From assembly GCF_020745735.1 (NCBI RefSeq), contig NC_083407.1, forward strand, positions 24,419,857 to 24,483,856: 64,000 nt of DNA. Reading direction: 5' to 3'. Made by a program: the position numbers and the translations under genes. Numbering within the stretch: the stretch's first letter is position 1; every line of letters starts with the position of its first letter. The DNA is from Hemiscyllium ocellatum (taxonomy: Eukaryota). Below, one piece after another: positions 4,196-59,129 of the stretch. The notes beneath the pieces were generated by a model. It was given only the letters and a program-made list of their open reading frames with translations, had not been told where the DNA came from and searched no databases.

Positions 4196-4360
4196 TGGGT
4201 CCATTTAATGGCTGTACGTACATTTTTTTAAAGTCTCAACATTGGTATGGCACATACTTCCTATATTAATGGAAGTATTTTCTTTTATTTTAAATGTGTT
4301 ACATTTTCAGACAAAGGTCATGCATACAAATTAACTGTTTTAACCTCATACAAACACTAT

Positions 4361-4564
4361 GACTGCAGATGCTAGAAACCAGATTCGGGATTAGTGGTGC
4401 TGGAAGAGCATAACAGTTCAGGCAGCATCCAAGGAGCAGCGAAATCGACGTTTCGGGCAAAAGCTCTTCATCAGGATGAAGGACTTTTGCCCGAAACGTC
4501 GATTTCGCTGCTCCTTGGATGCTGCCTGAACTGCTGTGCTCTTCCAGCACCACTAATCCAGAAT
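4361..4564. mobile_element. Palindromic PLE-terminus element (~90-bp arms) with hammerhead-derived centre
   Basis: Near-perfect inverted repeat centred ~4473; gacgtttcgggcaaaagctcttcatcag / gatgaaggacttttgcccgaaacgtc. Confidence 0.85.
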
Positions 4565-4737
4565 GTGTTTGTACGGTCATCCTAAATAACACTACTTGAC
4601 CCCAAAAATCAGTCATTGGCTTTTTAAAAAATGTTGTAGCCTTACTGGAAGCAAGTTTATTCCAATTTAGCCAGACTATTTAAAACAAACTGCAGTATTT
4701 AGATTGTGAAATGAATGGTGATGATTCTCCTTTACAG

Positions 4738-6702: not shown

Positions 6703-6918
6703 TGGAGATGCCGGTGTTGGACTGGGGTGTACAAAGTTTAAAAATCACACAATACCAGGTTATAGTCCAACAGGTTTAATTGGAAACACACTAGCTTTTG
6801 GAGCAACGCTCCTTCATCAGGTGACAATCACCTGATGAAGGAGCGTCACTCCGAAAGCTAGTGTGCTTCCAATTAAACCTGTTGGACTATGACCTGGTAT
6901 TGTGTGATTTTTTATCTC
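6703..6918. mobile_element. Palindromic PLE-terminus element, AGCU-hammerhead family, TSD-flanked
   Basis: ~85-bp inverted arms centred ~6826; 12-bp direct repeat tgttttattata at 6691-6702 and 6919-6930. Confidence 0.85.
6829..6863 (+). ncRNA. Minimal type I hammerhead ribozyme motif (intact core)
   Basis: cac-CTGATGA-a-ggag(cgtca)ctcc-GAAA-gc-TA-gtg: stem I cac/gtg, stem II ggag/ctcc, palindromic AGCT stem III. Confidence 0.7.
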
Positions 6919-21927: not shown

Positions 21928-22125
21928 CTGGATTATAGGAGGAGTTATGAAGATACTAAGGCTGCAGTTCACATCCCCAATGACATGATTAGCAACATTG
22001 TGGCAAAGAGATGCCAACATATTCTCAGCGACCTTGAATACCGCACCTATCTTCATCATTGGACCTGCCTGCCTGACGAGCATGATGTAATTCATGCTAA
22101 GAGAGCACAAGAGATCTTAAGCGAT
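21928..22125 (+). CDS. NEB: NEB exon 16 (198 nt, two repeats)
   Basis: ttttag|LDYRRSYEDTKAAVHIPND...HHWTCLPDEHDVIHAKRAQEILSD|gtacgt. Confidence 0.95.
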
Positions 22126-26569: not shown

Positions 26570-26833
26570 GTAAGTATTTGTCTGCTTTCACTCCAATAGC
26601 ATTAAATAGCTTGAGTTTAGTCTGCAGGTTCTTCATTTTCTGAGAGGTCTTTCCATGTATACTCCTGTGTGAGCTCTTCTGTCTTTTAAACTCCTTTATG
26701 TAGCAGGGCCTGGAGGTTATGGTTGGTCTGACTGGTAGATTAATGTATTTCATTTGCATTCCTCTCCCTGACATTTTAGCTCTGGTTAAAATAAAAGAGT
26801 TTAGATTAAACCTTCATTGACAAAGTCCTCTAG

Positions 26834-27140
26834 TTGAGAAGTGTGGTGCTGGAAAAACACAGCAGGCCAGGCAGAATCCGAGGAGCTTCTGAAGAAGGGC
26901 TTATGCCTGAAACGTTGATTCTCCTGCTCGGATGCTGTCTGGCCTGCTGTATTTTTCCAGCACCACACTTCTCAACTCTGGTCTCCAGCATCTGCAGTCC
27001 TCACTTTCTCCTAGTTGATTTTAACCTACTGTGAATCCTCTCGCAAGGATGCTTACCTTGAAGAAGCTCTCCTCCTCCCTCATTCTTGAAGAAGGGCTTG
27101 TGCCCGAAACGTCGATTCTCCTGCAGTCCTCACTTTCTCA
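26834..27140. mobile_element. PLE-terminus cluster with two hammerhead-derived motifs
   Basis: ctgaagaagggcttatgcctgaaacgtt and ttgaagaagggcttgtgcccgaaacgtc; partial inverted arms. Confidence 0.8.
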
Positions 27141-31975: not shown

Positions 31976-32137
31976 GAGCTGAAAATGTGTTGCTGGAAAA
32001 GGGCAGCAGGTCAGGCAGCATCCAAGGAGCAGGAGAATCGACGTTTCAGGCATAAGCCCTTCAAATGACCTGCTGCACTTTTCCAACAACACATTTTCAG
32101 CTCTGATCTCCAGCATCTGCAGTCCTCACTTTCTCCT
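31976..32137. mobile_element. Palindromic PLE-terminus element with central deletion
   Basis: Same family as 38999-39211; agttgtag direct repeat at 31968-31975 and 32138-32145. Confidence 0.85.
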
Positions 32138-32980: not shown

Positions 32981-33274
32981 TATGCTGGAAGCAAGCAATT
33001 ACATCAGCATCTAAGATTAAGCAATCTTTGGAGATGCTAAGAAGAAGGCCTAATAAATTTCATGCTCTTTATATAGTGGTCTCTATCAATTCCTATCAAT
33101 GTGATAATTAGACTGCTTCCTACTTGTTGGAAAGGCTGAAGGTTAGAAATTACAGTTGAAGTTCCCTTCTCTTGTATTTCTACTGCCATTTTCCTATCTT
33201 TTGGTCAGATTTGAGTTAGATGACAGATAACAAGCATCACAGTGCTAATTATGTTTTTCGTTCTATCTTTTCAG

Positions 33275-33379
33275 GTTCTGTACAAAGATGATCTCAACTG
33301 GCTTAAAGGAATTGGTTGCAATGTCTGGGACACTCCTCAGATACTTCATGCTAAGAAATCCTATGATCTCCAAAGTGCT
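33275..33379 (+). CDS. NEB: NEB exon 23 (105 nt, super-repeat start)
   Basis: tttcag|VLYKDDLNWLKGIGCNVWDTPQILHAKKSYDLQSA|gtatgt. Confidence 0.96.
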
Positions 33380-33504
33380 GTATGTTGGAGGGATTTGTCA
33401 CTGCAATGTGTTATTGGCATTGATTCTCTCTTTCCTTCTTGTTACTTGCCTTTTAACTGCCACTGATCATTTAATTTCTTTTCCACTTTTATTTATCTCC
33501 GCAG

Positions 33505-33609
33505 ATTCAATACAAGGCGAAGGCTGAGGCATCAAGGGACCAGTTCACGCCAGTCATGGATACTCCCACTTACCGGCAGTCTGTCACCAACGCTAAACAG
33601 TTGAGTGAT
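33505..33609 (+). CDS. NEB: NEB exon 24 (105 nt)
   Basis: ccgcag|IQYKAKAEASRDQFTPVMDTPTYRQSVTNAKQLSD|gtaagt. Confidence 0.95.
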
Positions 33610-33767
33610 GTAAGTATTTTTTGAGCCAATTTATAAAAAGAGACGTTAATAACATAGACTTAGAAATCTACTATCAGCTACAGGTTAAAACCGAATGATA
33701 AATTCTAGATAGTGCCGCTTCCATACAAAACAGGTACTGTTTTATTACACTTTAATAATAAGTGTAT

Positions 33768-34070
33768 GGGCAGCATGGTGGCTCAGTGGTTAGCACTGCT
33801 GCCTCACAGCATCATGGACCCGGGTTCAGTTCCTGCCTTGGGCAAATGTCTGTGTGGAGTTTGCACATTCTCCCCGTGTCTGCGTGGGTTTGCTCCGATT
33901 TCCTCCCACAGTCCAAAGATGTGCAAGTTAGGTGAATTGGCCATGTTAAATTGCCCATGGTGTTTGGTGTAGGGGAATGGGTCTGGGTGGGTTGCTCTTC
34001 AGAGGGTCAGTGTGGACTTGTTGGGCCGAAGGGCCTGTTTCCATACTGTAGGGAATCTAATCTCATCTAA
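33768..34070 (+). mobile_element. tRNA-derived SINE (HE1/V-SINE-like)
   Basis: gggcagcatggtggctcagtggttagcactgctgcctcacagc; (aatct)n tail. Confidence 0.9.
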
Positions 34071-34331
34071 TAAAATGTCATCAAAGCTCAACCTGATCTG
34101 TCATATGTTTTCTGACTTTTGAATATTTACATATATGTCTATTTACATTGTGTATTCATATTAGAAGATATATACTTTTACAGATACACATTGTACTGAC
34201 ATAAAAGCATTTCAAGAGAGATATATATGTACGCTTGATGTGTAATTCAATTATTTTGCTTTCAATATTTTGAGAATATAGTATGTTTGAAAGTGAAATA
34301 TTCTATTTATTCTCTTCCTTCTGTTTTTCAG

Positions 34332-34439
34332 TTTGTGTATCACAATGCTTATGTGACAAATATTAGAGGTACAGTTGCTCCAACCACAAAGACTGTGGAT
34401 CTGGATAGAGCTAGGCATGCCTATAAGTTACAGAGTGAG
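34332..34439 (+). CDS. NEB: NEB exon 25 (108 nt)
   Basis: tttcag|FVYHNAYVTNIRGTVAPTTKTVDLDRARHAYKLQSE|gtaagt. Confidence 0.95.
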
Positions 34440-34519
34440 GTAAGTGTGCGTCTAGATTTTTAAAATAAATTGCGAGAAGCCTCTCCAACTAACTGGACTT
34501 TGTAACATTCCTTTTGTAG

Positions 34520-34627
34520 AATCTTTATCGTGATACAGGCCGAAGCCTTCTCCCCACTGGATATACCATTCCGGCAGATATCCCATTCTTAAAGCATGCC
34601 AGAAATGTTGACCATAACCGCAGCGAT
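34520..34627 (+). CDS. NEB: NEB exon 26 (108 nt)
   Basis: ttgtag|NLYRDTGRSLLPTGYTIPADIPFLKHARNVDHNRSD|gtaagt. Confidence 0.95.
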
Positions 34628-34869
34628 GTAAGTATTACCCTGAAACCCACTTTTGAATCTCTCGAATCAGATTTCCACACTTGCTGCTGCACTAAATGAA
34701 CTGTTCGCGAAGTTACAAATCATGTTCTGTCTTCAGGTCTCTCCAGGTCTTCAGCCTTTGACATGGTTCTCAATGCTGTTTTTATCCAATGCTTCTCCAC
34801 TGCTATCAGGCAGGCAGGACTGAGGTCACATAATTCCATTCTTATTTATGAAACTTCAGTCAATCACTG

Positions 34870-35690
34870 GATCTCCAGGACCTATCCTTGGCCATCCTAC
34901 TATTTCTCATCTACATGCTGCCCTCCAGCTACATCATTCAAAGATGCAGAGTTCATTTTTCCATGTACCGCACTTTGCTCTCTCTCACCACCATCTCTCT
35001 CAATTCCTCCACTGTTAGTAAATTATTCAACTGTTTATCTCTCATTCAGTACTGGATGAACAGAAATTTTCTCCAATTAAATAATGAAAAGGCTGAAGCC
35101 AATGTTTTCAGTCAGTACTCCAGAATTTCATTCCCCAGTCACCATCACCATCCTGGTCTCTAGCAATGGTTTAATATTCAGCCAGTCTACTTTCTTTGTG
35201 TTAATTTTGATCTCAAGTCAGATTTTCACCATTAATAAGATCACTTATTTCCATTTCAGAACATCAGCTCTTAACTCATCAGCTACTCTTTCATGCCTTT
35301 GTTTCCTCTAGGCCTGACCATTTCAAAACACTCTTGGTTGGTCTCCTATATTCTATCCTTCATAAAGTTTCAAAACTCTGCTGCCTGTAACTTAACACAG
35401 CAAGTGTTGCTCCTTTATCCCTGTACTCGCAACATACATTGGCTCCATCAGGATTTAAAAATCCCAATTCTTGTTTTCATGTCTATGACTTTGCCCCTTT
35501 CTGTTTCTGGGGTCTCTTCCCAGATTTCTGTGCTTCACCAATACTGAGTGTGCATCTCCAATTTCAATTGCAACTCCACTACTGGTCATGCTTTTAATTA
35601 CCTAGGCCGCAACTCACCCTTCAGCTCTCTGTCTCTTGAAGACACTCCTTAACTATTTCTGTAACCAAGTTTTTGGCCATTTAACCTAAT
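34870..35690 (+). mobile_element. Old L2-clade LINE fragment
   Basis: FLIYMLP...WMNRNFLQLNNEKAE-like coding; a related minus-strand copy surrounds the SINE at ~10330-11200. Confidence 0.7.
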
Positions 35691-35808
35691 ATTGAAATGA
35701 CACCCATAGCATGAATTGTTGATAATAACCCAGATAATATTAGGGTCTGAGAACGACTTCTCAGTGACATACGCCCCCACCAGAGATACAAAGTCAGGTT
35801 TCTGAAAT

Positions 35809-35950
35809 TCAATTTCAGATTCCTGAAGAAGGGCTTATGCCCGAAACGTCGAATCTCCTGTTCCTTGGATGCTGCCTGACCTGCTGCGCTTTTCCAGCAA
35901 CACATTTTCAGCTCTGATCTCCAGCATCTGCAGACCTCCCTTTCACCCCA
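35809..35950 (+). mobile_element. Single-arm PLE-terminus element, TSD-flanked
   Basis: 11-bp direct repeat gtttctgaaat at 35798-35808 and 35951-35961; near-identical to the right arm of 38999-39211. Confidence 0.88.
35817..35856 (+). ncRNA. Minimal type I hammerhead ribozyme motif (fully paired, intact core)
   Basis: agattc-CTGAAGA-a-gggc(ttat)gccc-GAAA-cg-TC-gaatct: 6-bp stem I, 4-bp stem II, palindromic ACGT stem III, GUC site. Confidence 0.78.
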
Positions 35951-36236
35951 GTTTCTGAAATGGCCAAACAGAAGATTGTGTGAGATTATATAAATTATAA
36001 CATAGATAGAAACTTATGAATGAACTCAATAAGCAATTCAAGTATAATTGGAATGTTAAACTGTTTCAAAAAAAAGAGAAAATATAACTTTATTTCAAGG
36101 GCAGAATCCTGGTTCACATAACGGATAATGTGACAATAAAACATATCAACTACAGTGTCCAGCAAGTCTTAAAACTATCAACTATGGTATCTATCAATTC
36201 TTAAAGTAACATTTACTTTAATTGCCTCAGTGTAAT

Positions 36237-37210
36237 TGTCATTTACATAAATGATTTGGATGCGAGCATAAGAGGTACAGTTAGTATGTTTGCAGATGAC
36301 ATCAAAATTGGAGGTGTGGTGGACAGCAAGAGGGTTACCTCAGATTACAACAGGATCTGGACCAGATGGGCCACTAGGCTGAGGAGTGGCAGATGGAGCT
36401 TAATTCAGATAAATGCGAGGTGCTGCATTTTGGTAAAGCAAATCTTAGCAGGACTTATACACTTAATGGTAAGGTCCAAGGGAGTGTTGTTGAACAAAGA
36501 GACCTTGGATTGCAGGTTCATAGCTCCTTGAAAGTGGAGTCGCAGGTAGATAGGGTAGTGAAGAAGGCGTTTGGTATGCTTTCCTTTATTGGTCAGAGTA
36601 TTGAGTACAGGAGTTGGGAGGTCATGTTGCGGCTGTACAGGACATTGGTTAGGCCATGGTTGGAAATATTGCATGCAATTCTGGTCTCCTTCCTATAGGA
36701 AAGATGTTGTGAAACATGAAAGGGTTCAGAAAAGATTTACAAGGATGTTGCCAGGGTTGGAGGATCTGAGATACAGGGAGAGGCTGAACAGGCTGGGGCT
36801 GTTTTCCCTAGAGCTTCGGAGGCTGAGGGGTGACCTTATAGAGGTTTACAAAATTATGAGGGACATGCATAGGATAAATAGACAAAGTCTTTTCCCTGGG
36901 TTCGGGGAGTCCAGAACTAGAGGGCATAGGTTTAGGGTGAGAGGGGAAAGATATAAAAGAGAATTAAGGAGCAACTTTTTCATGCAGAGGGTGGTACATG
37001 TATGGAGTGAGCTGCCAGAGGATGTGGTGGAGGTTGATACAATTGCAACATTTAAGAGGTATGAGTATATGAATAGGAAGGGTTTGGAGGGATAAGGGCC
37101 GGGTGCTGGCAGGTGGGACTAGATTGGGTTGGGATATCTGGTTGGCATGGACGGGTTGGACTGAAGGGTTTGTTTCCATGTTGTACATCTCTATGACTCC
37201 ATGACTCTAA
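36237..37210 (+). mobile_element. 5'-truncated CR1-clade LINE
   Basis: MFADDIKIGG, KCEVLHFG, RRLRGDLIEVYK peptides over three frames; (ctatgact)n-type tail. Confidence 0.95.
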
Positions 37211-38998
37211 GTGAAATGTACCTGTCTCAGTTTGGGAGGAAATCATTTTTGCTGAATCTCAACAGTTAAACCTTTATCTTAAGATGAGACTCAAGTGAGG
37301 GAAGTTAATCTGAAAAATACATCGATTTCAACCTGTTTAATGTTGTTTGAAGATGGAAAATAATTTCTTATGCATAGGATGGTTTCTTAATTGTAATTAA
37401 TTTCAGCCCATTTATCATAAGAATTTGGTTTTAATCACTTACTTCCAACTTAAGAACAACATTTTCTGATTCTATGAAAATTTATATAACTAAAATTTAC
37501 AAAACAATATCTCAGTATTATTGATTCTAAAAATGCTTAGCTTGCGAGGGCTGTGGTGCTTAACTTCCATTAGTTTTTGGATTATGATGTGCTTCTAGAT
37601 CGTTTAAATTCCAATTGAGTGTGGATTATCAGCACATTTTACCAAATTTACCTACATTGCACTTTTGTTACCTGACAATGTGTAAAAAATATGCAAGTGT
37701 ACAGTTTTTTTGGGTGTGGATTTCTTACCACGAAATCTGTAAAAGTCATTGTCTTTAAAAAAGCCCTTTTAAATTGTTTTAGCCATTTTTAGCCTAACAT
37801 ACTTAATTAAGGCTGTTTTTGTTTAAATGGATTCTTGACAGCAAAATGTCTTGAGTAGAGCGAAATTAAATATAATATCCTTTATTGTCATGTGTACTCT
37901 GTACAGAAGTACTGGAGTACAGTGAAAAAATTTTACTTATTGGTACTGGCACCAGTACCTAGGTACAAATCTAGGATACAAAAGATCAATGAAAAGTAGT
38001 ATCATTACTTAGTGTCTTAAAAAATAAGTTAGAGGTAAGATTGTTATAACAAACTTGATGGATTGACATTACAGTCTGGTAAAGTATTTCAGATCGACAT
38101 TACATTGCAGCAGCACATTGAACACATGGTCTGACTCCCCCTTGCAAAGCCCCAACCGAATAACTGTCCCGCTCTATTCCAAGCATCCAGTCCGTTTCAA
38201 ACTGGCACTCAGCTGCACCAAGGTAAGTTGCGCTGCTCCAAGACTCGCTTTTCCTCTCACGAATCTCCACTACTTGTTTCAGCTTGCACAGTTCTAGGGC
38301 TCATACCTATTGTGCTGCACCAACATTCGCTTCCCCTCTCTGCTCCAGGACCCGTTTCCCCTCACTGCTCCGGGACTTGAGGCAGACAATGCACCTTATT
38401 AACTTCCTCAAAGTTCTGTAAATGCAGTTTTTCCAACTGCTGTGCCATTTGTGTTTAGTTGTCAACATCCCCATTTGCTTTGCTGCATAACTTTTCCACA
38501 AAGCATCCTGTTCTCTTTCTGACAATATTCCATCAGCAATCATTAAAGACCAGTTTTTAACTTTTTAGCCTTTAAAAAATTATAGCTATTTTTCTTTCCT
38601 GCCCTTTGCTAACAGTTCTGTAGTAGCACTTATATCAGAATGTTGTAGATTCAAGTCCCAGTCTGGAGATAGTAGCACAAAATCCAGCTGGAAGTACCAT
38701 GTGAGTACCAGTGACAGGCACCATCTATTGGATGGAATATTATATGCAGCCTCACCTGCTCGATTGGATGGACATGAAAATCGCATTGTATAATTTCAGG
38801 AAATGTTATCTTTGGTGTCATGGGTAGTACATATCCATCAAACAGTATAACTGAAATATATTATCTGCTATGGTATTATTCCTGCCCTTAATTACTTCAT
38901 AGTCAATCCTTTGAAATGTCACTGTAATGAAGGGAAGTATTGCTTGTACTGTTCCTCCAGGGTGAATGCTAATCATCCATTGTTTCTTAGGATAATAG

Positions 38999-39211
38999 CT
39001 GAAAATGTGTTGTTGGAAAGGCGCAGCAGGTCAGGCAGCATCCAAGGAGCAGGAGAATCGACGTTTCGGGCATGAGCCCTTCTTCAGATTCCTGAAGAAG
39101 GGCTCATGCCCGAAACGTCGATTCTCCTGTTCCTTGGATGCTGCCTGACCTGCTGCGCTTTTCCAGCAACACATTTTCAGCTCTGATCTCCAGCATCTGC
39201 AGACCTCACTT
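38999..39211. mobile_element. Young palindromic PLE-terminus element with back-to-back hammerhead cores, TSD-flanked
   Basis: ~90-bp near-perfect inverted arms centred ~39089; 16-bp direct repeat tttcttaggataatag at 38983-38998 and 39212-39227. Confidence 0.92.
39086..39125 (+). ncRNA. Hammerhead ribozyme motif (intact core, one U-U mismatch in stem I); mirror copy on the minus strand ~39055-39091
   Basis: agattc-CTGAAGA-a-gggc(tcat)gccc-GAAA-cg-TC-gattct. Confidence 0.65.
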
Positions 39212-39448
39212 TTTCTTAGGATAATAGTCTCACAAACCCAAATGGTGAATGCAGGTAGTGGCATTAGAACAATATTCACTGTAACTCAGAGAGGTCACTA
39301 GACTAAATACAAAAACATGGAATCAAAGGATTTATATGGCACAAATACTTATGTTTGTTTGTGCCTTCTGTTCAAACACTATAACTATAAGATTTTGTTC
39401 TTTTAGATGGGCTTGATTGTCAAAAACATTTCTCATTTTCTTTTATAG

Positions 39449-39556
39449 CTGAAGTATAAGGAAGCTTATGAACATATGAAAGCAAGAGGCTACAAATTGA
39501 TCCCAGAAACCATTAGCATTACTGCAGCCAAGAAAGCAGATCTTATTTTGAATCAG
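39449..39556 (+). CDS. NEB: NEB exon 27 (108 nt)
   Basis: ttatag|LKYKEAYEHMKARGYKLIPETISITAAKKADLILNQ|gtaatg. Confidence 0.95.
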
Positions 39557-39654
39557 GTAATGTAGGCACACTGTTAGCATGAACACATTGATCATAAAAG
39601 ATTACCGTGGGAAAGGTGAATATTTGATGCATTTAATTCCTTTCTCTGATGCAG

Positions 39655-41298: not shown

Positions 41299-42810
41299 GG
41301 TGTTGTGCTGGAAAAGCACAGTAGGTCAGGCAGCATCTGAGGAGCAGGAGAATCAGCATTTCGGGTATAAGCCCTTCATCAGGAGTGAGGCTTGTGGACT
41401 GGGGGGCTGAGAGATAAATGGGGAGGGGTGTAGGGGCTAAAGGGAAGGTAGCTGGGAATGTAATAGGTAGATGAAGGTTTTGGGTGAAAGTGATAGATTG
41501 GAGTGGAGGGTGGATGGATAGATGGGAAAGGTGATGGACAGGTCAGGAGGGCGGTGCCCAGTTGGAGGCTTGGGACTGGGATAATGTGGGAGGGAGGGGG
41601 ATTGAGGAAACTGTTGAAATTCACATTGATCCCGTGTGGTTGCAGGGTCTCAAGGTACAATATGAGGTGTTCTTCCTCCAGGCGTTGGGTGATTAGGGTT
41701 TGGCGAAGGAGGAGGCCCAGGACCTGCATGTCCTTGACCAAGTGGAAGGGGGAGTTGAAGTGTTCAGCCATGGGTCGGTGGGGTTGGTTGGTGCAGGTGT
41801 CCCAGAGATGTTCTCTGAAACGATCAGCAAGGAGGCATCCTGACTCCCTGATGTAGAGGAGATCACATTGCGTGCAATGGATGCAATAGATGACATTGGT
41901 GGAGGTACAGGTAAATCTCTGTTGGATGTGGAAGGCTTCTTTGGGGCCTTGGATGGAGGTGAGGTTTTGCACTTCCTGTGGTGGCAGGGGAAGGTGCCAG
42001 CAATGGGGTGTGGGCTGGTGGGGGATTTAGACCTGACTAGGCAGTCGTGGAGGGAATCGTCTCTCCAGAACATTGATAGGGGTGGAGTGGGAAATATCGC
42101 TCTGGTGGTGGGGTCCGTTTGTAGGTGGACCTAGTGGCAGAGAATGATGCGATGTATGCAGAGGTTGGTGGGGTGGAAGGTGAGAAGCAGGGGGATGTTC
42201 TGTCCTTGTTGCATTGGGAGGGGTGGGGCTCAAGGGCAGTGATGTGGGAAGTGGAGGAAATGTGCTGGAGGGCATCATTGACCACGTGGGAAAGGAAATT
42301 GCGATCTTGGAAGAAGGAGGCCCATCTGGGATTTTCTAAGGTAAAATTGGTCATCCTGGGAACAGATGTGTTGGGAGCGGAGGAATTGGGAATAAGGGAT
42401 GGCATTTTTACAGGAGGTAGGATGGGAGGAGGTGAAATCTAGGTAGCTGTGGAGGTTGCTGGGCTTGTAGTAGATGTCCATGGTCAGTCAGTCGTCGGAG
42501 ATGGAGAGGTGCAGGAAGGGAGGTTACCGAGATGGTTCAGGTGAATTTGAGGTCAGGGTGGAAGGTGTTGGTAAAGTTGATGAACTGTTCAACCTCCTAG
42601 TGGAAGAATTAGGTAGCACCGATATGATCATCGATGTAGCGCAGGAACATGTGGGGGGGTGGTGCCAGCGTAACTGTGGAAGATGGATTGTTCCATGTAT
42701 CCGACAAAGAGGCAGCATAGCTGGGTCCCATGCAGGTGCTCAAGGCTACCCCTGCGTTTGGAGGATGTGGGAGGAGAGGTTATTTTGGGTGAGGACCAAT
42801 TTAGCCAGGC
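41299..42810 (-). mobile_element. Penelope-like retroelement (Neptune-like): RT C-terminus, Cys linker, GIY-YIG endonuclease, 3' UTR, decayed hammerhead
   Basis: FTCTSTNVIYCIHCTQCDLLYIRESG...RFREH...AEHFNS (GIY-YIG); GTFPCHHRKCKT linker; DIYYKPSN..YLDFTSSHP..K.AIPYSQFLR thumb; YIDD at ~42625-42640. Confidence 0.93.
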
Positions 42811-43560
42811 CCCCCACTGCCCCTTAACCATAACCTCATCACCCATCACCAAACCATCATCTCGCAGACCATCCACAAACTCATCACCTCTGGGGATCTC
42901 CCATCCACAGCCTTCAACCTGATCGTCTGTGAACCCTGCACCACCCAATTTTACCTCCTACCGAAGAGTCACAAACCTGACTGCCCCATTCGACTCATTG
43001 GCTCAGCCTGCTCCTGTCCCACTGAACTCATCTCTGCATACCTTGACACTGTCCTGACCCCTTTAGTCTAGGAACTCTCTACCTACGTTCAGGACACCAC
43101 CCACGCATTTGACATACTCCAAGATGTTTGTTTTTCCAGCCCCCAAAATCTCATCTTCACCATGGGCATCCAGTCCTTGTACACATCATTCGCCATGATG
43201 AAGGCCTCCAAGCCCTTTGTTTCTTTCTCTCACATCGTCCCAACCAGTACTCTTACACCAACTCCCTCATTCACCTGGCTGAACTGGTGCTCACCCTTAA
43301 CAATTTCTCCTCCCAATCCTCCCACTTTCTCCAAACCAAAGGGCATGGCACCTGCATGGCCCTCAGCTATGCCTGCCTCTTTGTCAAGTACATGGAACAG
43401 TCCACCTTCTGTAGTTACACTGGCACCACCCCCACCTTTCCTCCACTACATTGATGAATGTATTGGCGCTACCTCGTGCTCCCAAGAGGAGGTCGAACAG
43501 ATTCAGCAACCTCACCAACACCTTTCACCCCAACCTCAAATGGTCTCCTTCATTGCCAGA
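42810..43560 (+). mobile_element. Penelope-like RT fragment in opposite orientation
   Basis: FYLLPKSHKPDCPIR, LIFTMGIQSLYTS, LTLNNFS..HFLQTKG..GTCMA.SYACLF, YIDECIG motifs (frameshifted). Confidence 0.9.
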
Positions 43561-43589
43561 TCCTAACCACCCGAGGTCTGGAGGAATTT

Positions 43590-44270
43590 GAATTGAATGG
43601 AATTGAATTGAATTTATAGTCACATGTACCAAGGCACAGTGAAAAGCTTTGTCTTGTGATCAATATAAGCATATCACAAAGTTAAGTAGCATAGATAAGT
43701 AAATAATAGGTAAACAGCGGCAAAAACCAAAACACAGGTACAGGTGAATGCTAAGAGTTTGAGAGTCCATTCAGTATCCTAACAACAGTAGGATAGAAAC
43801 TGGCTGATGCGTGTGTTCAGGCTTCCGTACCTTCTCCCCGATGGTAGAGGTTGTAGAAAAGCATTGCCAGGGTGGGATGGATCTTTGAGAATGCTGGCAG
43901 CCTTTCCTTGACAGCAGACCTGGTAGATGGATTCTACAGATGGGAAGTTGGCCTTTGTGATTGTCTGGGCCGAGTTCACCACTCTCTGTAACCATCTCCG
44001 ATCTTGAATGGTACAGTTGCCATACCAGGTGGTGATACATCCAGCCAGAATGCTCTCGATGGCGAACCTATAAAAATTGGCAAGGGTATTTACCATCATG
44101 CCAAATTTTCTCAGCTGTCTGAGGAAGAAGAGTTGTTGTTGGGCCTTTGTAACCAGTGCGTCCACACGAAGAGTCCAAGAAAGCTCTTTGTTGATCATAT
44201 TCCCAGGAGCTTGACACTCTCCATTTGTTCCACCTCTGTGCTGTTAAGGTGTAGGGAGGCATGAGTAACA
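43590..44270 (-). mobile_element. Rex1/Babar-clade LINE 3' fragment
   Basis: KAQQQLFFLRQLRKFG...FYRFAIESILAGCITTWYG...DPSHPG...LPSGRRY; (ttcaa)n tail. Confidence 0.88.
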
Positions 44271-44680
44271 TCCCACCAAAAATCAAAAATATTCTGCCTT
44301 GGGACCCTACAACCAAATGGGATCAATGTGGATTTCAACATTTTCCTCATTTTCCCCTCCCTTCACATTTTCCCAAGCCTTCAACTCTGCACCTCCCTCC
44401 TGACCTGTCCATCACCTTTCCCATCTGTCAACTCCACCCTCCTCTCCGACCTTCTCCCTCACCTTCACCTATCTGTTGCATTCTCTGCTATCTTCCATCT
44501 AGCCCCACCCCCTCCCATTTATCTCTCGGGCCCCCAGACCCACAACCCTAATTCCTGATGAAGAGCTTATGCCTGAAATGCTGACTCTCCTGCTACTTGG
44601 GTGCTGCCTGATCTGCTGTGCTTTTCCAACATCACAGTCTCAACTCTGATCTCCAGCATCTGCAGTCCTCCCTTTCTACT
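44270..44680 (+). mobile_element. PLE 3' end (GIY-YIG tail, UTR, decayed hammerhead)
   Basis: Inverted counterpart of 41299-41680; cctgatgaagagcttatgcctgaaatgct. Confidence 0.85.
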
Positions 44681-47028: not shown

Positions 47029-47133
47029 AAAAAATACAAGGAACAATATGAGAAGTTCAAGAGTAAATACACTACAATCCCAGATACTCCAACATTGTTG
47101 ATTTCTAAGAAAGCATACATAATTGCCAGTGAT
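47029..47133 (+). CDS. NEB: NEB exon 34 (105 nt)
   Basis: tgttag|KKYKEQYEKFKSKYTTIPDTPTLLISKKAYIIASD|gtatgt. Confidence 0.95.
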
Positions 47134-47232
47134 GTATGTATTGAATAATTCCTTCTTACTGGTATATAAAGAGATTTCATAACCATCTGTGATTTTTTCA
47201 CATTTTGAGGACACTCTTTTTGCTTTTAATAG

Positions 47233-50637: not shown

Positions 50638-53600
50638 ATAGAACATAGAAGAATGCAGCACATTACAGGCCTTTCAGCCCTTGATGTTGTGCCAATCCTT
50701 TATCTAATCCTAAGATCAAACTAACCTTTCTACCCTGTGTTTTATTATCGTGTATATGGCTATCCAAGAGTCACTGAAATGTCCCTAATGTATCTGACTC
50801 TACTACCACTGCTGGCAGTGCATTCCATGCACCCAAAAACCTCTGTGTAAAGAACCTACTTCTGACATCTCCCCTAAACCTTCCTCCAGTCACCTTAAAA
50901 TTATGCCCCAGCATGACAGCTATTCCTGCCCTGGAAAACAAGTCTCTGGGTATCCACTCTATCTATGCTTCCTATCATCTTGTACACCTCTATCAAGTCA
51001 CCTCTTATCTATCTTTGTTCCAATGAGAAAAGCCCTAGCTCCCTCAGCTTTCTTCCTATGACACGCCCTCCAGTCCAGGCGGCATCCTAGTAAATCTCCT
51101 TGCACCCTCTCTAAAGCTTCCATATCATAGAACATAGAACATAGAACAGTACAGCACAGAACAGGCCCTTCAGCCCACAATGTTGTGCCGACCATTGATC
51201 CTCATGTAAGGTAAACCTAATGTACGAACCCTCAAATTTCTGTGACCATATCCATGTCCAGCAGTCTCTTAAATATCGCCAATGTCCTCGCTTCCAGAAC
51301 TGCTGCTGGCAATGCATTCCATGCTCTCACAACTCTGCATAAAGAATCCGCCTCTGACATCCCCTCTATACTTTCCACCAAACAGCTTAAAACTATGACC
51401 CCTCGTGTTAACAATTTCTGTCCTGGGAAATAGTCTCTGGCTATCAACTCTATCTATGCCTCTCATTATCTTATACACCTCAATTAGGTCCCCTCTCTCT
51501 CTTCTTTTTTCCAATGATAAAAATCTGAGCTCAGTCAACCTCTCTTCATAAGATAAGCCCTCATTTCCAGGCAGCATCCTGGAACTGACATCCAGGCACC
51601 TCCTCTGAACCCTCTCCAAAGCATCCACATCTTTCCTATAATAGGGTGACTAGAACTGGACACAGTATTCCAAGTGCGGTCTAACCAAAGTTTTATAGAG
51701 CTGCAACAAGAATTCATGGCTCTTAAAGTCAATCTCCCGTTAATGAAAGCCAAAACACCATATACTTTCTTAACAACTCTGTCCACCTGGGTGACAGATT
51801 TAGGGGATCTATGTACCTGCACACCAAGATCCCACTGTTCCTCCACACTACCAAGAATCCTGTCTTTAATCCTGTACTCAACCTTCAAGTTCAACCTTCC
51901 AAAATGCATCACTTCGTATTTTTCCAGGTTGAACTCCATCTGCCACCTCTCAGCCCATCTCTGCATCCTGTCAATATCCCGCTGCAGCCTACAATAGCCC
52001 TCTATACTGTCAACGACACCTCCAACCTTTGTGTCATCTGCAAACTTGCTAACCCATCCCTCAATCTCTTCATCCAAGTCATTAATAAAAATTACAAACA
52101 GTAGAGGCCCAAGAACAGAGCCCTGTGGAACATCACTCACCTCTGACTTCCAGGCAGAATACTTTCCTTCCACTACCACTTGCTGTCTTCTGTCGACCAG
52201 TCAATTCTGTATCCAGACAGCTAAATTTCCCTGTATCCCATTTCTCCTGACGTTCTGAAGGAGCCTACCATGGGGAACCTTATCAAATGCCTTGCTGAAG
52301 TCCATATACACCACATCCACAGCTCGACCCTCATCAACTTATCTAGTAACATCCTCAACGAACTCAATAAGATTCGTGAGGCATGACCTGCCCCTCACAA
52401 AGCCGTGCTGACTGCATTTAATCAAGCCATGCTCTTCCAGATGGTCATAAATCCTATCCCTCAGAAGACTTTCTAACACCTTGCAGATGACAGATGTGAG
52501 ACTGACTGATCTGTAATTGCTGGGGATTTCCCTATTTCCTTTCTTGAAGAGACGAATCCTTCTGATAATGAGGTGACCAGAACTGAACACAATATTCCAA
52601 GTGTGGTCTAACCTGGGCTCTATAGAGCTGCAGCATAACCTCAAGGCTCTTAAACTCAATCCCCCCCTGCTAAGAAAAAACAACACAACAGATGCCTTCT
52701 TAATAACCTGATCAACTTGGGTGCAATTCTGAGGGATCTATGAACATGGTCCCTAAGTTCCCTCTGTTCCTCCACACTGCCAAGAATCCCACCTTTTAAC
52801 CCTGTACTCTGCATTCAAATTTGACCTTCCAAAATGAATCACTTCACACTTTTCCAGATTGAGATCTATCTGCCACTTCTCAGCCCATGTTTGCATCCTG
52901 TTAATTTCCCGTTGCAACCTACAACAGCCCTCCACACTATCCAAAACTCCACTAACCTTCATATCATCGGCAAACTTACTAACTCACCTTTCCACTTCCT
53001 CATCCTGGTCACTTATAAAAATCACAAAGAGCAGACGTCCCAGAACAGATCCCTGCGGAGCACCACTGATCACCGAGCTTCAGGCTGAATACTTTCCAAC
53101 TACCACCACCCTCTGTCTTCTATGGGCCAGCCAATTCTGTATCCAGACAGTCCAGTTTCTCTGTGTCCAATGTCTCCTTACTTCTGAATGAGCCTATCTT
53201 GGGATCCTTATAAAAAGCCTTGCTAAAATTCATGTACACCACACCCACTACTCTACCTTCATCAATGTGTTTTGTCACATCCTCAAAGAATTCAAAAAGA
53301 TTTGTGAGGCCCTCGTAAGACCTGCCCCCCCCCCCCCCCCAAAGGACAAAGTGAGGACTGCAGATGCTGGAGATCAGAGTTGAAGAGTGTGGTGTTGGAA
53401 AAGTACAGTAGGTCAGCCAACATCCAAGGGGCAGGAGGATCGACATTTCCTGATGAAGAGCTTGTACTTGAAATGTCGACTCTCCTGCTCCTCGGATGCT
53501 GCCTGACCGGCTGTGCTTTTCCAGCATTACACTCTTTGACTCTGTCTCTCATAAAGCCATGGACTACCTCTATTCAAGCTATGCTTTTCCAAATTATCTT

Positions 53601-58327: not shown

Positions 58328-58670
58328 GTAAAAGCGCTTGGTGTTGTGCACTATTGTATCTTCTTTATATTTTTTGGATTGTCTTAAACTAAAGCATTGA
58401 ACACTAAGCATTAATCATTTTAAAAGTTCATTTGGAAATAGATTAATCAATATTTTGGTGAATTTCAGTTGCAAACCAAGTTGAGATTAATTTCTAAAAT
58501 GTTCCCTACTAATTCAAGCACAAGTAATTTTGCTGTGTGCATGTGTGGCACTGTCTTCTTTAATAACACTTACTGCATGTTTTTTGATTGATATTCTATT
58601 GATATTGGGCCAGATTTTGATAAAATGTGGCATTTTGTTTCACCTTCTTAGATGCAAAATTTTAGTTTTG

Positions 58671-59050
58671 GGCTTTACAGAGACGTGGGTAGAACAGGGG
58701 CAAGAATGGCTGTTGCAGGTTCCAGGGTTTAAATGTTTTAGTAGGGTCAGACATGGGGGTAAAAGAGGGGGAGGTGTGGCATTACTTGTCAAGGATAGTA
58801 TTACAGCGGTGGAAAGGACGATGGAGGAAGACTTGCCATCTGAGGTAGTTTGGGCTGAGGTTAGAAATAGGAAAGGTGAGGTCACCCTGTTAGGTGTTTT
58901 CTACAGGCCTCCTAATAGTCCGAGAGAAGTAGAGGATAGTATTGCGAGGATGATTCAGGAGAAGAGTGAAAGTAGCAGGGTGGTTGTTATGGGGGACTTT
59001 AACTTCCCAGATATTGACTGGGAAAGCTATAGCTCGAGGTCGTTAGATGG
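58671..59050 (+). mobile_element. Internal CR1 ORF2 fragment, APE endonuclease domain only
   Basis: TETW...RGGGVALLVK...GVFYRPPNS...VVMGDFNFPDIDW in an uninterrupted frame. Confidence 0.92.
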
Positions 59051-59129
59051 AATACAGCTTTTCAGCAAGATCTGGCCCATTGGGTTGACATTGATTGCTC
59101 TACATTAATTATTTGCTCGCTGTATACAG

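What the first reader, a model, noticed from the sequence alone, without database searches (positions are those of the whole stretch)
35798..35961. Intact hammerhead ribozyme motif on the sense strand of a nebulin intron, carried by a ~140-bp TSD-flanked mobile unit
Seen: agattc-CTGAAGA-A-gggc(ttat)gccc-GAAA-CG-TC-gaatct (35817-35856). It has all conserved core nucleotides (CUGANGA, GAAA, UH), a perfect 6-bp stem I and a 4-bp stem II. Stem III is reduced to the self-complementary ACGU. The unit is flanked by an 11-bp direct repeat, so it inserted on its own. Established: Penelope-like elements carry minimal type I hammerheads with a palindromic stem III that work as dimers, and an extra A after CUGANGA is a tolerated natural variant. 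Inference: this is a non-coding, non-autonomous, ribozyme-bearing PLE parasite that could nick the NEB pre-mRNA after GUC 35848-35850. Unlike the palindromic copies, it is not locked in a long local hairpin.
Basis: partly seen in the sequence, partly recalled or inferred. Interest (0 to 1): 0.82.

Follow-up and report, generated by a model that had tools for sequence, protein, structure and literature searches.

The report
Truncated Penelope tail with hammerhead motif
The 142-bp insert in a shark nebulin intron is an ordinary truncated end-piece of a Penelope-like retrotransposon that carries that family's known minimal hammerhead ribozyme motif, and nothing found here suggests it cuts the nebulin transcript.

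Summary
The motif sits at 35817-35856 exactly as written. It is flanked by an exact 11-bp target-site duplication and lies on the sense strand of a nebulin-repeat gene intron.

It is not special to this locus. The window holds about 14 loci (18 arms) of the same repeat. A second, unrelated-looking family at 6703-6918 carries the same motif with a covarying stem II and palindrome.

The same tail lies about 225 nt downstream of a decayed GIY-YIG endonuclease ORF at 41604-42475 (-). The family also shows the Penelope "tail" signature. So this is the 3' end of a Penelope-like element (PLE) with the published PLE minimal hammerhead, a known kind. This scan has already noted it hundreds of times elsewhere in this genome.

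The "perfect 6-bp stem I" is private to this copy. It comes from a T-to-A change at 35853 plus a fold-back junction; older long copies pair only 2-3 bp.

In transcript context, the 5' strand of stem I and C3-A6 are predicted to be held in a hairpin with the upstream flank (35794-35826). There is no tandem partner. Published PLE hammerheads are inactive as monomers.

Cleavage of nebulin pre-mRNA is therefore unlikely, but it was not tested: the single read-laying run failed. Interest is low.

The parts
35798..35808 (+). left target-site duplication GTTTCTGAAAT
   Evidence: exact 11-nt repeat, with only two matches in the window
35809..35813 (+). 5 nt of junction filler not shared with other copies
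   Evidence: alignment A1; this is part of the right arm of the junction near-palindrome
35814..35818 (+). TTCAG, a 5-nt remnant of an inverted (fold-back) arm; the junction CAG|ATTC is the same as in the 39087 fold-back
   Evidence: 9 of the 10 nt before the core match copy 39087+, against 5 of 10 for the old long copies
35817..35822 (+). helix I, 5' strand AGAUUC
35823..35829 (+). catalytic box C3-A9 (CUGAAGA; N7 = A in the young subfamily, U in the old one)
35830..35830 (+). unpaired A between A9 and G10.1, a hallmark of PLE minimal hammerheads
   Evidence: present in 12 of 12 tabulated copies of both families; described in PMC4209133
35831..35842 (+). helix II, GGGC/GCCC with loop UUAU
   Evidence: pairing probability >0.92 in every context folded
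35843..35850 (+). G12 A13 A14, the palindrome A15.1-C-G-U16.1 (35846-35849), and the C17 cleavage-site nucleotide (35850)
35851..35856 (+). helix I, 3' strand GAAUCU; the A at 35853 is a private T-to-A change (the family has GATTCT)
35857..35950 (+). long-form 3' tail of the PLE terminus; it has no poly(A) and ends about 100 nt after the cut site
   Evidence: 97.6% identity to arm 39087-39212; the end is defined by other copies and by the TSD
35951..35961 (+). right target-site duplication
35794..35826 (+). competing hairpin: the upstream flank plus TSD pairs with the element's 5' end, covering the helix I 5' strand and C3-A6
   Evidence: 14 of 16 complementary; it is in the minimum-free-energy fold of the 96-, 146-, 301- and 701-nt contexts
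38999..39211 (.). closest relative: a fold-back (tail-out) copy with a 16-bp TSD; the only other core-intact sense copy in the same intron
   Evidence: predicted 89-bp hairpin of -188.7 kcal/mol
41604..42475 (-). decayed C-terminal ORF of a Penelope-like element (HTH_animal plus GIY-YIG endonuclease), directly upstream of the same hammerhead tail (core at 41382, - strand)

Best explanation
The unit at 35809-35950 is a young, 5'-truncated retro-insertion of the 3' terminus of a Penelope-like element (PLE). It was made by target-primed reverse transcription and left an 11-bp TSD.

Like all copies of its family, it carries the PLE minimal type I hammerhead. This has no helix III hairpin, only the palindrome ACGU, so catalysis would need a domain-swapped dimer of two copies (a double hammerhead) and probably protein help.

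In the parent element the motif most likely processes multimeric or read-through PLE transcripts. That step is inferred from the literature and not shown here.

At this locus the motif is a passenger:
- It is single.
- Its 5' half is predicted to be trapped in a hairpin with the flank.
- Its only intact sense neighbour is locked in an 89-bp fold-back.

It is therefore most likely catalytically silent and neutral for nebulin expression.
For: Family membership:
- The window holds 18 arms at about 14 loci.
- Copy lengths grade from about 70 bp to more than 1.2 kb, as expected from 5' truncation.
- TSDs of 8-16 bp flank 4 copies of this family, and a 12-bp TSD flanks the family-2 fold-back.

PLE link:
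- ORF 41382-41972 (-) has homologues at E 7.5e-25 carrying PF01541 GIY-YIG, PF26215 and PF00078.
- These homologues map collinearly to 42475-41604.
- The Atlas search gave 0.96 to GIY-YIG clusters.
- The hammerhead core lies about 225 nt downstream of this ORF.

PLE 'tail' signature:
- All 7 inverted structures have one arm 22-39 nt longer than the other.
- This matches the optional 30-40 bp tail and the two RT start sites described in PMC11167929.

Motif definition: every published min-HHR feature is present (PMC4209133).

Covariation between the two families in the window:
- Stem II is GGGC/GCCC in one family and GGAG/CUCC in the other, with 2 pairs changed on both sides.
- The palindrome is ACGU in one and AGCU in the other.

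Evidence for silence at this locus:
- Helix I pairing probability is <=0.11 in a 96-nt context and 0.0 in 301- and 701-nt contexts.
- The hammerhead-compatible fold costs +2.0, +5.3 and +7.2 kcal/mol respectively.
- The double-hammerhead dimer scores -24.7 kcal/mol, against -25.8 for two monomers.
- Published work reports no cleavage by single min-HHRs and weak cleavage by dimers (PMC4209133).
- The Anolis PLE hammerhead cleaves only with protein, and no RNA-seq ends were found at its site (PMC11167929).
- Copies decay at CpG and core positions like neutral DNA: only 3 of the 10 tabulated copies of this family keep both the core and all stem II pairs.
Against:
- The folding arguments use nearest-neighbour energies, which ignore hammerhead tertiary structure, co-transcriptional kinetics and proteins.
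- As an isolated 40-mer, this copy does fold as a hammerhead: -12.9 kcal/mol, z -2.8.
- Its core is fully intact.
- Non-CpG core positions are slightly less diverged than the tail (7.8% against 13.7%), though the sample is small.
Confidence: 0.85

Rival explanations
1. One reading: the motif is an active ribozyme that nicks nebulin pre-mRNA after C35850. It would act as a monomer, or by pairing its ACGU with another sense copy, for example the one at 39092 in the same intron.
For: - The core is intact.
- Helix I has 6 bp and helix II has 4 bp.
- The hammerhead fold is the minimum-free-energy fold of the isolated 40-mer.
- A second core-intact sense copy lies 3.2 kb downstream in the same intron.
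Against: - There is no helix III, and published single min-HHRs show no detectable cleavage (PMC4209133).
- The competing hairpin 35794-35826 forms first during transcription and removes helix I in every context fold.
- The would-be partner at 39092 sits in an 89-bp hairpin of -188.7 kcal/mol.
- The dimer is not favoured energetically.
- At least 4 core-intact sense copies are tolerated within 64 kb of one essential muscle gene, which argues that they do little harm.
Confidence: 0.04
2. The unit is a copy of a dedicated short non-autonomous element: a SINE-like or retrozyme-like fold-back master that parasitises PLE proteins. It would not be a randomly truncated copy of an autonomous PLE.
For: - Copy 35818 shares the exact fold-back junction CAG|ATTC with copy 39087 (9 of 10 nt) and is 97.6% identical to it. 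This suggests that a short fold-back template was itself copied.
- All four loci of the young CTGAAGA subfamily in the window are short.
- A 2026 preprint (10.64898/2026.07.22.740005) derives vertebrate non-LTR retrozymes from PLE terminal repeats.
Against: - The other fold-backs have different junctions, so they arose independently at insertion.
- Copy lengths form a continuum up to a copy with an ORF.
- There is no tandem head-to-tail array at this locus.
- The window sample is far too small to define a master element.
Confidence: 0.25
3. The hammerhead resemblance is a chance look-alike in a repeat, and the sequence has no ribozyme ancestry.
For: - No Rfam hammerhead model matches, even at E<=10 on 351 nt.
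- Helix I is only 2-3 bp in ancestral copies.
- A relaxed descriptor finds about 3 hits per shuffled window.
Against: - Two unrelated repeat families in the window keep the same boxes, the same extra A, the G10.1-C11.1 pair and a palindrome, while their stem II and palindrome sequences covary.
- The architecture is the one published for PLE termini, and the family is tied to a GIY-YIG ORF.
- The only box position that differs between the old and young subfamilies is the free N7.
Confidence: 0.03

Closest known systems
Minimal hammerhead ribozymes of Penelope-like elements (min-HHR; Cervera & de la Pena 2014, PMC4209133; the dimer-type variants of Lunse et al. 2017 were not readable here)
   Same: - Type I topology with CUGANGA, GAAA and UH.
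- An unpaired nucleotide between A9 and G10.1.
- The G10.1-C11.1 pair.
- No helix III hairpin, only a palindromic 15.x-16.x segment.
- Mostly dispersed single or inverted copies from truncated PLEs.
- Very high copy number in non-mammalian vertebrates.
   Different: - Helix II is only 4 bp here (6-8 bp in the Schistosoma and Drosophila virilis examples).
- Ancestral helix I is only 2-3 bp.
- The 6-bp helix I of this copy is a private accident.
- The exact shark family was not found named in the papers I could read.
Poseidon PLE of Anolis carolinensis (PAc; Frangieh et al. 2024, PMC11167929)
   Same: - The hammerhead lies near the terminal-repeat/ORF junction.
- Inserted copies end at internal RT start sites some tens of nt downstream of the cut site, in an AC-rich stretch.
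- There is an optional tail of about 30-40 bp.
- Both target strands can be primed, which fits the tail-out fold-backs seen here.
   Different: - Here each inverted insertion uses one long and one short tail end (7 of 7), whereas the paper reports no strand difference in vitro.
- Distances from the cut site are about 70 and 100 nt here, against about 85-92 nt there.
- No full-length element or start of the ORF is present in this window.
Non-LTR retrozymes of animals (Cervera & de la Pena 2020, PMC7229834; Li et al. 2026 preprint)
   Same: Short non-coding hammerhead-bearing retroelements related to PLE terminal repeats. Solo monomers are common, including in introns.
   Different: Retrozymes are defined by head-to-tail tandem units bounded by hammerheads that yield circular RNAs. 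This locus is a single TSD-flanked unit with one motif.
Canonical type I hammerheads (Rfam Hammerhead_1, e.g. Schistosoma Sm-alpha, newt satellite 2)
   Same: The same catalytic core, and the same reliance on dimers when helix III is short.
   Different: There is no helix III hairpin, no loop 1 and no loop-loop contacts. No Rfam model scores it.

Membership tests
PLE minimal hammerhead (min-HHR, PMC4209133) | Catalytic boxes C3-U-G-A-N-G-A9, G12-A-A14, A15.1/U16.1 and H17 (not G) | tested here: met
   All are present at 35823-35850.
PLE minimal hammerhead (min-HHR, PMC4209133) | One unpaired nucleotide between A9 and G10.1 | tested here: met
   This is A35830. It is kept in 12 of 12 tabulated copies of two families.
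PLE minimal hammerhead (min-HHR, PMC4209133) | G10.1-C11.1 closing pair of helix II | tested here: met
   G35831-C35842; helix II pairing probability is >0.92.
PLE minimal hammerhead (min-HHR, PMC4209133) | Helix III absent or minimal, with a palindromic 15.x-16.x segment allowing a dimeric helix III | tested here: met
   ACGU at 35846-35849; family 2 has AGCU.
PLE minimal hammerhead (min-HHR, PMC4209133) | Consensus families with compensatory changes in the stems | tested here: inconclusive
   - Between the two families in the window, 2 of 4 helix II pairs and the palindrome change on both sides.
- Within the family, the changes are mostly CpG decay and pair-breaking.
- Only 12 sequences were available, so a genome-wide set is needed.
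PLE minimal hammerhead (min-HHR, PMC4209133) | Self-cleavage as a dimer | not testable with these tools
   This needs in vitro transcription or end-specific RNA sequencing. Read laying failed.
Penelope-like element insertion | The family's full-length form encodes RT plus a C-terminal GIY-YIG endonuclease | tested here: met
   - 42475-41604 (-) aligns collinearly to proteins carrying PF26215, PF00078 and PF01541, with a best E-value of 7.5e-25.
- The Atlas search scored 0.96 to GIY-YIG clusters.
- The same hammerhead tail follows this ORF (84.5% identity to the reference arm).
- The 142-bp copy itself holds the tail only.
- Pfam on the ORF pieces alone gave nothing.
Penelope-like element insertion | 'Tail' signature: two classes of 3' ends about 30-40 bp apart, and no poly(A) | tested here: met
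   Short ends fall near arm position 100 and long ends near 126-133. The overhangs measure 22-39 nt in 7 of 7 inverted structures. This copy has the long form.
Penelope-like element insertion | Target-site duplication and frequent partial inverted or tandem copies | tested here: met
   TSDs of 8, 8, 11, 12 and 16 bp; 6 fold-backs plus one 3.4-kb tail-out structure.
Canonical type I hammerhead (Rfam Hammerhead_1 and relatives) | Score at or above the Rfam gathering threshold; a helix III hairpin | tested here: not met
   There is no hammerhead family hit at the gathering threshold on the window, nor at E<=10 on 35700-36050. There is no helix III hairpin.
Non-LTR retrozyme | Head-to-tail tandem units bounded by hammerheads (two or more motifs in direct orientation) | tested here: not met
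   There is a single motif between the TSDs. The nearest direct pair in the window, 26889/27086, is a different locus, and its second member is an internally deleted fragment with C3 mutated.

The most novel reading that the evidence does not exclude
This sense-strand copy may cleave a fraction of nebulin pre-mRNA after C35850, despite the unfavourable folds. That would require help from PLE-encoded protein or chaperones, or pairing with another sense copy. Intronic PLE tails would then be a hidden layer of transcript attrition in shark muscle genes.
Probability: 0.03. Interest if true: 0.6.

Novelty: new member of a known kind. Interest (0 to 1): 0.13.

Why it matters
It matters little as a discovery. 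It is one more copy of a retrotransposon terminus whose ribozyme motif was described in 2014 and is known to be very abundant in non-mammalian vertebrates. This scan has already flagged the motif many times in this genome.

Its main use is for annotation. Such motifs in shark introns should be read as PLE tails, and a 'perfect' stem in a single copy should not be taken as evidence of function.

The window does give a compact, internally consistent illustration of PLE insertion anatomy: TSDs, tail-out fold-backs, and a strict long/short tail asymmetry. The asymmetry could inform models of dual-strand priming by PLE proteins.

Tried and rejected
- **Read laying.** I tried RNA and DNA runs over 33250-39240. 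So I have no RNA coverage, no RNA-end data, and no empty-site check in related species. All runs offered were assembled contigs anyway, which cannot show cleavage ends.
- **Rfam.** No hammerhead hit at gathering or E-value thresholds. This is uninformative, because PLE minimal motifs lack helix III.
- **Pfam on the PLE ORF pieces.** No hits even at E<=10. The link needed the homology search and tblastn.
- **MAFFT alignment of the two hammerhead families.** It misplaced the 1-nt loop difference, so I tabulated pairs by script and did not use the count of structure pairs.
- **Core versus tail divergence.** The 7.8% versus 13.7% non-CpG difference is too small a sample, and is contaminated by fold-back junctions, to claim selection.
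- **Lunse et al. 2017 (PMC5785218).** Not held in the library.
- **Loop II ATG as the PLE start codon.** I considered whether the ATG at 35837 is the PLE start codon, as in the Anolis element. The distance to the insert's end is about 111 nt, which resembles that element's geometry. But by my own frame count on the sequence, this copy's frame stops after 26 codons at 35915-35917, so I make no claim.
- **Extending long copies upstream to find a 5' end.** No two copies share more than about 515 bp.

Full report
**1. Observation**

- AGATTC at 35817-35822
- CTGAAGA at 35823-35829
- an extra A at 35830
- GGGC-TTAT-GCCC at 35831-35842
- GAAA at 35843-35846
- the self-complementary ACGT at 35846-35849
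- C at 35850
- GAATCT at 35851-35856

The direct repeat GTTTCTGAAAT is exact at 35798-35808 and 35951-35961. It occurs nowhere else in the window, against 0.08 expected by chance. The insert between the repeats is 142 bp.

Nebulin-repeat exons lie only on the + strand. Pfam PF00880 matches 1-228, 21928-22125 and 47032-47136, and further exons were found by tblastn. The nearest flanking exons are 33275-33382 and 39452-39559. The unit is therefore intronic and in sense orientation.

**2. It is a repeat family, not a locus-specific feature**

The 28-nt core recurs 6 times within 3 mismatches, against 0 expected. Searches with tail motifs and blastn with the arm 39087-39212 find 18 arms at about 14 loci in 64 kb.

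Alignment A1 gives the family consensus: CTGATGA, then A, GGGC, TTAT, GCCC, GAAA, CG, TC, followed by GATTCTCC and about 90 more bases.
- A young subfamily has CTGAAGA at N7. Its members are the loci at 35818, 39087, 32062 and 26889/27082. Copy 35818 is 97.6% identical to arm 39087+.
- Older copies have CTGATGA. They are 72-85% identical and extend up to about 515 bp upstream in pairwise comparisons.
- Many loci are fold-backs with two arms in tail-out inverted orientation. Their junctions differ from locus to locus.

**3. Link to Penelope-like elements**

I tested that lead.
- The ORF at 41382-41972 (-) lies directly upstream of the hammerhead core at 41382 (-).
- It scores 0.96 to eukaryotic GIY-YIG clusters in the Atlas search.
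- It has 42 homologues, with a best E-value of 7.5e-25. Many carry PF01541 (GIY-YIG), and some carry PF26215 or PF00078.
- These homologues map collinearly onto 42475-41604 (-), with one frame shift.

RT plus a C-terminal GIY-YIG endonuclease is the defining ORF of canonical PLEs (PMC4209133, PMC8557442 abstract, PMC11167929). So the hammerhead-bearing tail is the 3' terminus of a PLE.

A second PLE hallmark is also present. In all six fold-backs and in the 3.4-kb tail-out structure, one arm ends 22-39 nt earlier than the other. This matches the optional 30-40 bp 'tail' and the two adjacent internal reverse-transcription start sites described for the Anolis PLE. That PLE's protein also nicks and extends both target strands (PMC11167929), which offers a ready explanation for tail-out fold-backs.

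TSDs of 8, 8, 11, 12 and 16 bp flank five insertions. There is no poly(A).

**4. The motif against the published definition**

Cervera and de la Pena (PMC4209133) define the PLE minimal hammerhead by four features:
- the catalytic boxes
- the G10.1-C11.1 pair
- a palindromic 15.2-16.2 segment in place of helix III

All four are met here.

A relaxed descriptor scan also found a second, sequence-unrelated fold-back family at 6703-6918. It has the same boxes and the same extra A. Its helix II is GGAG/CUCC where the first family has GGGC/GCCC, and its palindrome is AGCU where the first family has ACGU. That makes two helix II pairs and the palindrome changed on both sides. This is covariation at the level of element families, which is where selection on a retroelement ribozyme acts.

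Within the family, individual copies decay like neutral DNA:
- CpG sites in GCCCGAAACGTC go to TG or CA.
- G12 is lost in two copies.
- C3 or U16.1 is lost in others.
- Only the three young arms keep both the core and all stem II pairs.

Rfam models do not score the motif. This is expected for a hammerhead without helix III, and it excludes membership of the canonical families only.

**5. The 'perfect stem I' is an accident of this copy**

The family's 3' strand is GATTCT. This copy alone has GAATCT, from a T-to-A change at 35853.

The 5' strand AGATTC has two sources. The ATTC is ancestral. The AG is the last two bases of a 5-nt remnant (TTCAG) of an inverted arm, and the junction is the same as in the 39087 fold-back.

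Helix I pairing in the other copies:
- The 39087+ copy pairs 5 of 6.
- The old long copies pair 2 bp plus one isolated pair.
- Family 2 pairs 3 bp.

**6. Is it likely to cut nebulin pre-mRNA?**

As an isolated 40-mer, the hammerhead secondary structure is the minimum-free-energy fold: -12.9 kcal/mol, z -2.8.

In transcript context it is not. Positions 35794-35809 (flank plus TSD) pair with 35811-35826 (14 of 16). This sequesters the helix I 5' strand and C3-A6.
- The hairpin is in the MFE of the 96-, 146-, 301- and 701-nt contexts.
- Helix I pairing probabilities fall to <=0.11 in the 96-nt context and 0.0 in the 301- and 701-nt contexts.
- Forcing the hammerhead fold costs +2.0, +5.3 and +7.2 kcal/mol in the 96-, 301- and 701-nt contexts.
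- Because the hairpin lies upstream, it can form before the helix I 3' strand is transcribed (inference).

Dimer formation also looks unlikely.
- The domain-swapped double hammerhead of two 40-mers scores -24.7 kcal/mol, against -25.8 for two monomers.
- The only other core-intact sense copy in the same intron (39092) lies in an 89-bp hairpin of -188.7 kcal/mol.

Published data point the same way.
- Single min-HHRs show no detectable cleavage, and dimers cleave weakly (PMC4209133).
- The Anolis PLE hammerhead cleaves only when the PLE protein is present, and no RNA-seq reads end at its cut site (PMC11167929).

Finally, at least four core-intact sense copies sit within 64 kb of one essential muscle gene, which argues that they are harmless.

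All of this is inference. The only tool that could have shown RNA ends failed, and the runs on offer were assembled contigs.

**7. Verdict**

The finding is a real and correctly read motif, but it is an ordinary member of a known class: a 5'-truncated PLE tail insertion with the PLE minimal hammerhead.

The emphasis on an 'intact' ribozyme poised to nick NEB pre-mRNA is not.

Whether the young short copies descend from a dedicated short fold-back master, which the shared junction with 39087 would suggest, or are simply truncated PLE copies cannot be settled from one window. I put the former at about 0.25.

The scan has already noted this motif class on many other pieces of this genome. One follow-up there (s1-188222) reached the same 'known kind' verdict.

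Noticed in passing
window 38999-39211, 31976-32137, 26838-27010, 4363-4553, 53348-53548, 6703-6918, 41301-44675: Every tail-out inverted insertion has one long-tailed arm and one arm that ends 22-39 nt earlier (7 of 7). This fits the two RT start sites and dual-strand priming reported for a PLE in vitro, but it implies a strand asymmetry that the paper did not see.
   Followed up: partly
window 6703-6918: A second fold-back family, unrelated in sequence, carries a core-intact sense hammerhead at 6832 (CUGAUGA-A-GGAG..CUCC-GAAA-GCUA) and a 12-bp TSD (TGTTTTATTATA). Its inverted arm has G12 decayed to A.
   Followed up: partly
window 41301-44675: A 3.4-kb tail-out inverted PLE fragment. The - arm holds a decayed HTH_animal plus GIY-YIG ORF end (41604-42475). 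Inner inverted repeats lie at 42545-42809 / 43274-43541.
   Followed up: partly
window 35794-35826: The 5' junction of the studied copy forms a 14-of-16 near-palindrome between the target site (TSD) and the element's first bases. My rough, uncomputed estimate puts such a match at well under one per window by chance. It may be a by-product of how the 5' end was joined.
   Followed up: partly
window 4340-4575: The old fold-back at 4363-4553 has no direct TSD. Its flanks are inverted copies of each other (CATACAAACAC on one side, GTGTTTGTACG on the other), as if it had inserted at the centre of a palindromic site.
   Followed up: no
window 35837-35917 and other copies: Loop II holds an ATG in most copies. 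The distance from it to the long-tail end is about 111 nt, similar to the ORF-start-to-RT-start geometry of the Anolis PLE. The frame is open to the end in copy 26889, but by my own frame count on the displayed sequence it stops after 26 codons in the young copies.
   Followed up: partly
window 26832-27123: Two hammerhead motifs lie in direct orientation 197 nt apart (26889 and 27086). The second belongs to an internally deleted fragment with C3 mutated to T.
   Followed up: no
window 51538-52179 (-) and 58530-59105 (+): LINE fragments in nebulin introns: RVT_1 (E 6.4e-12) and an APE-type endonuclease (E 9.3e-13).
   Followed up: no
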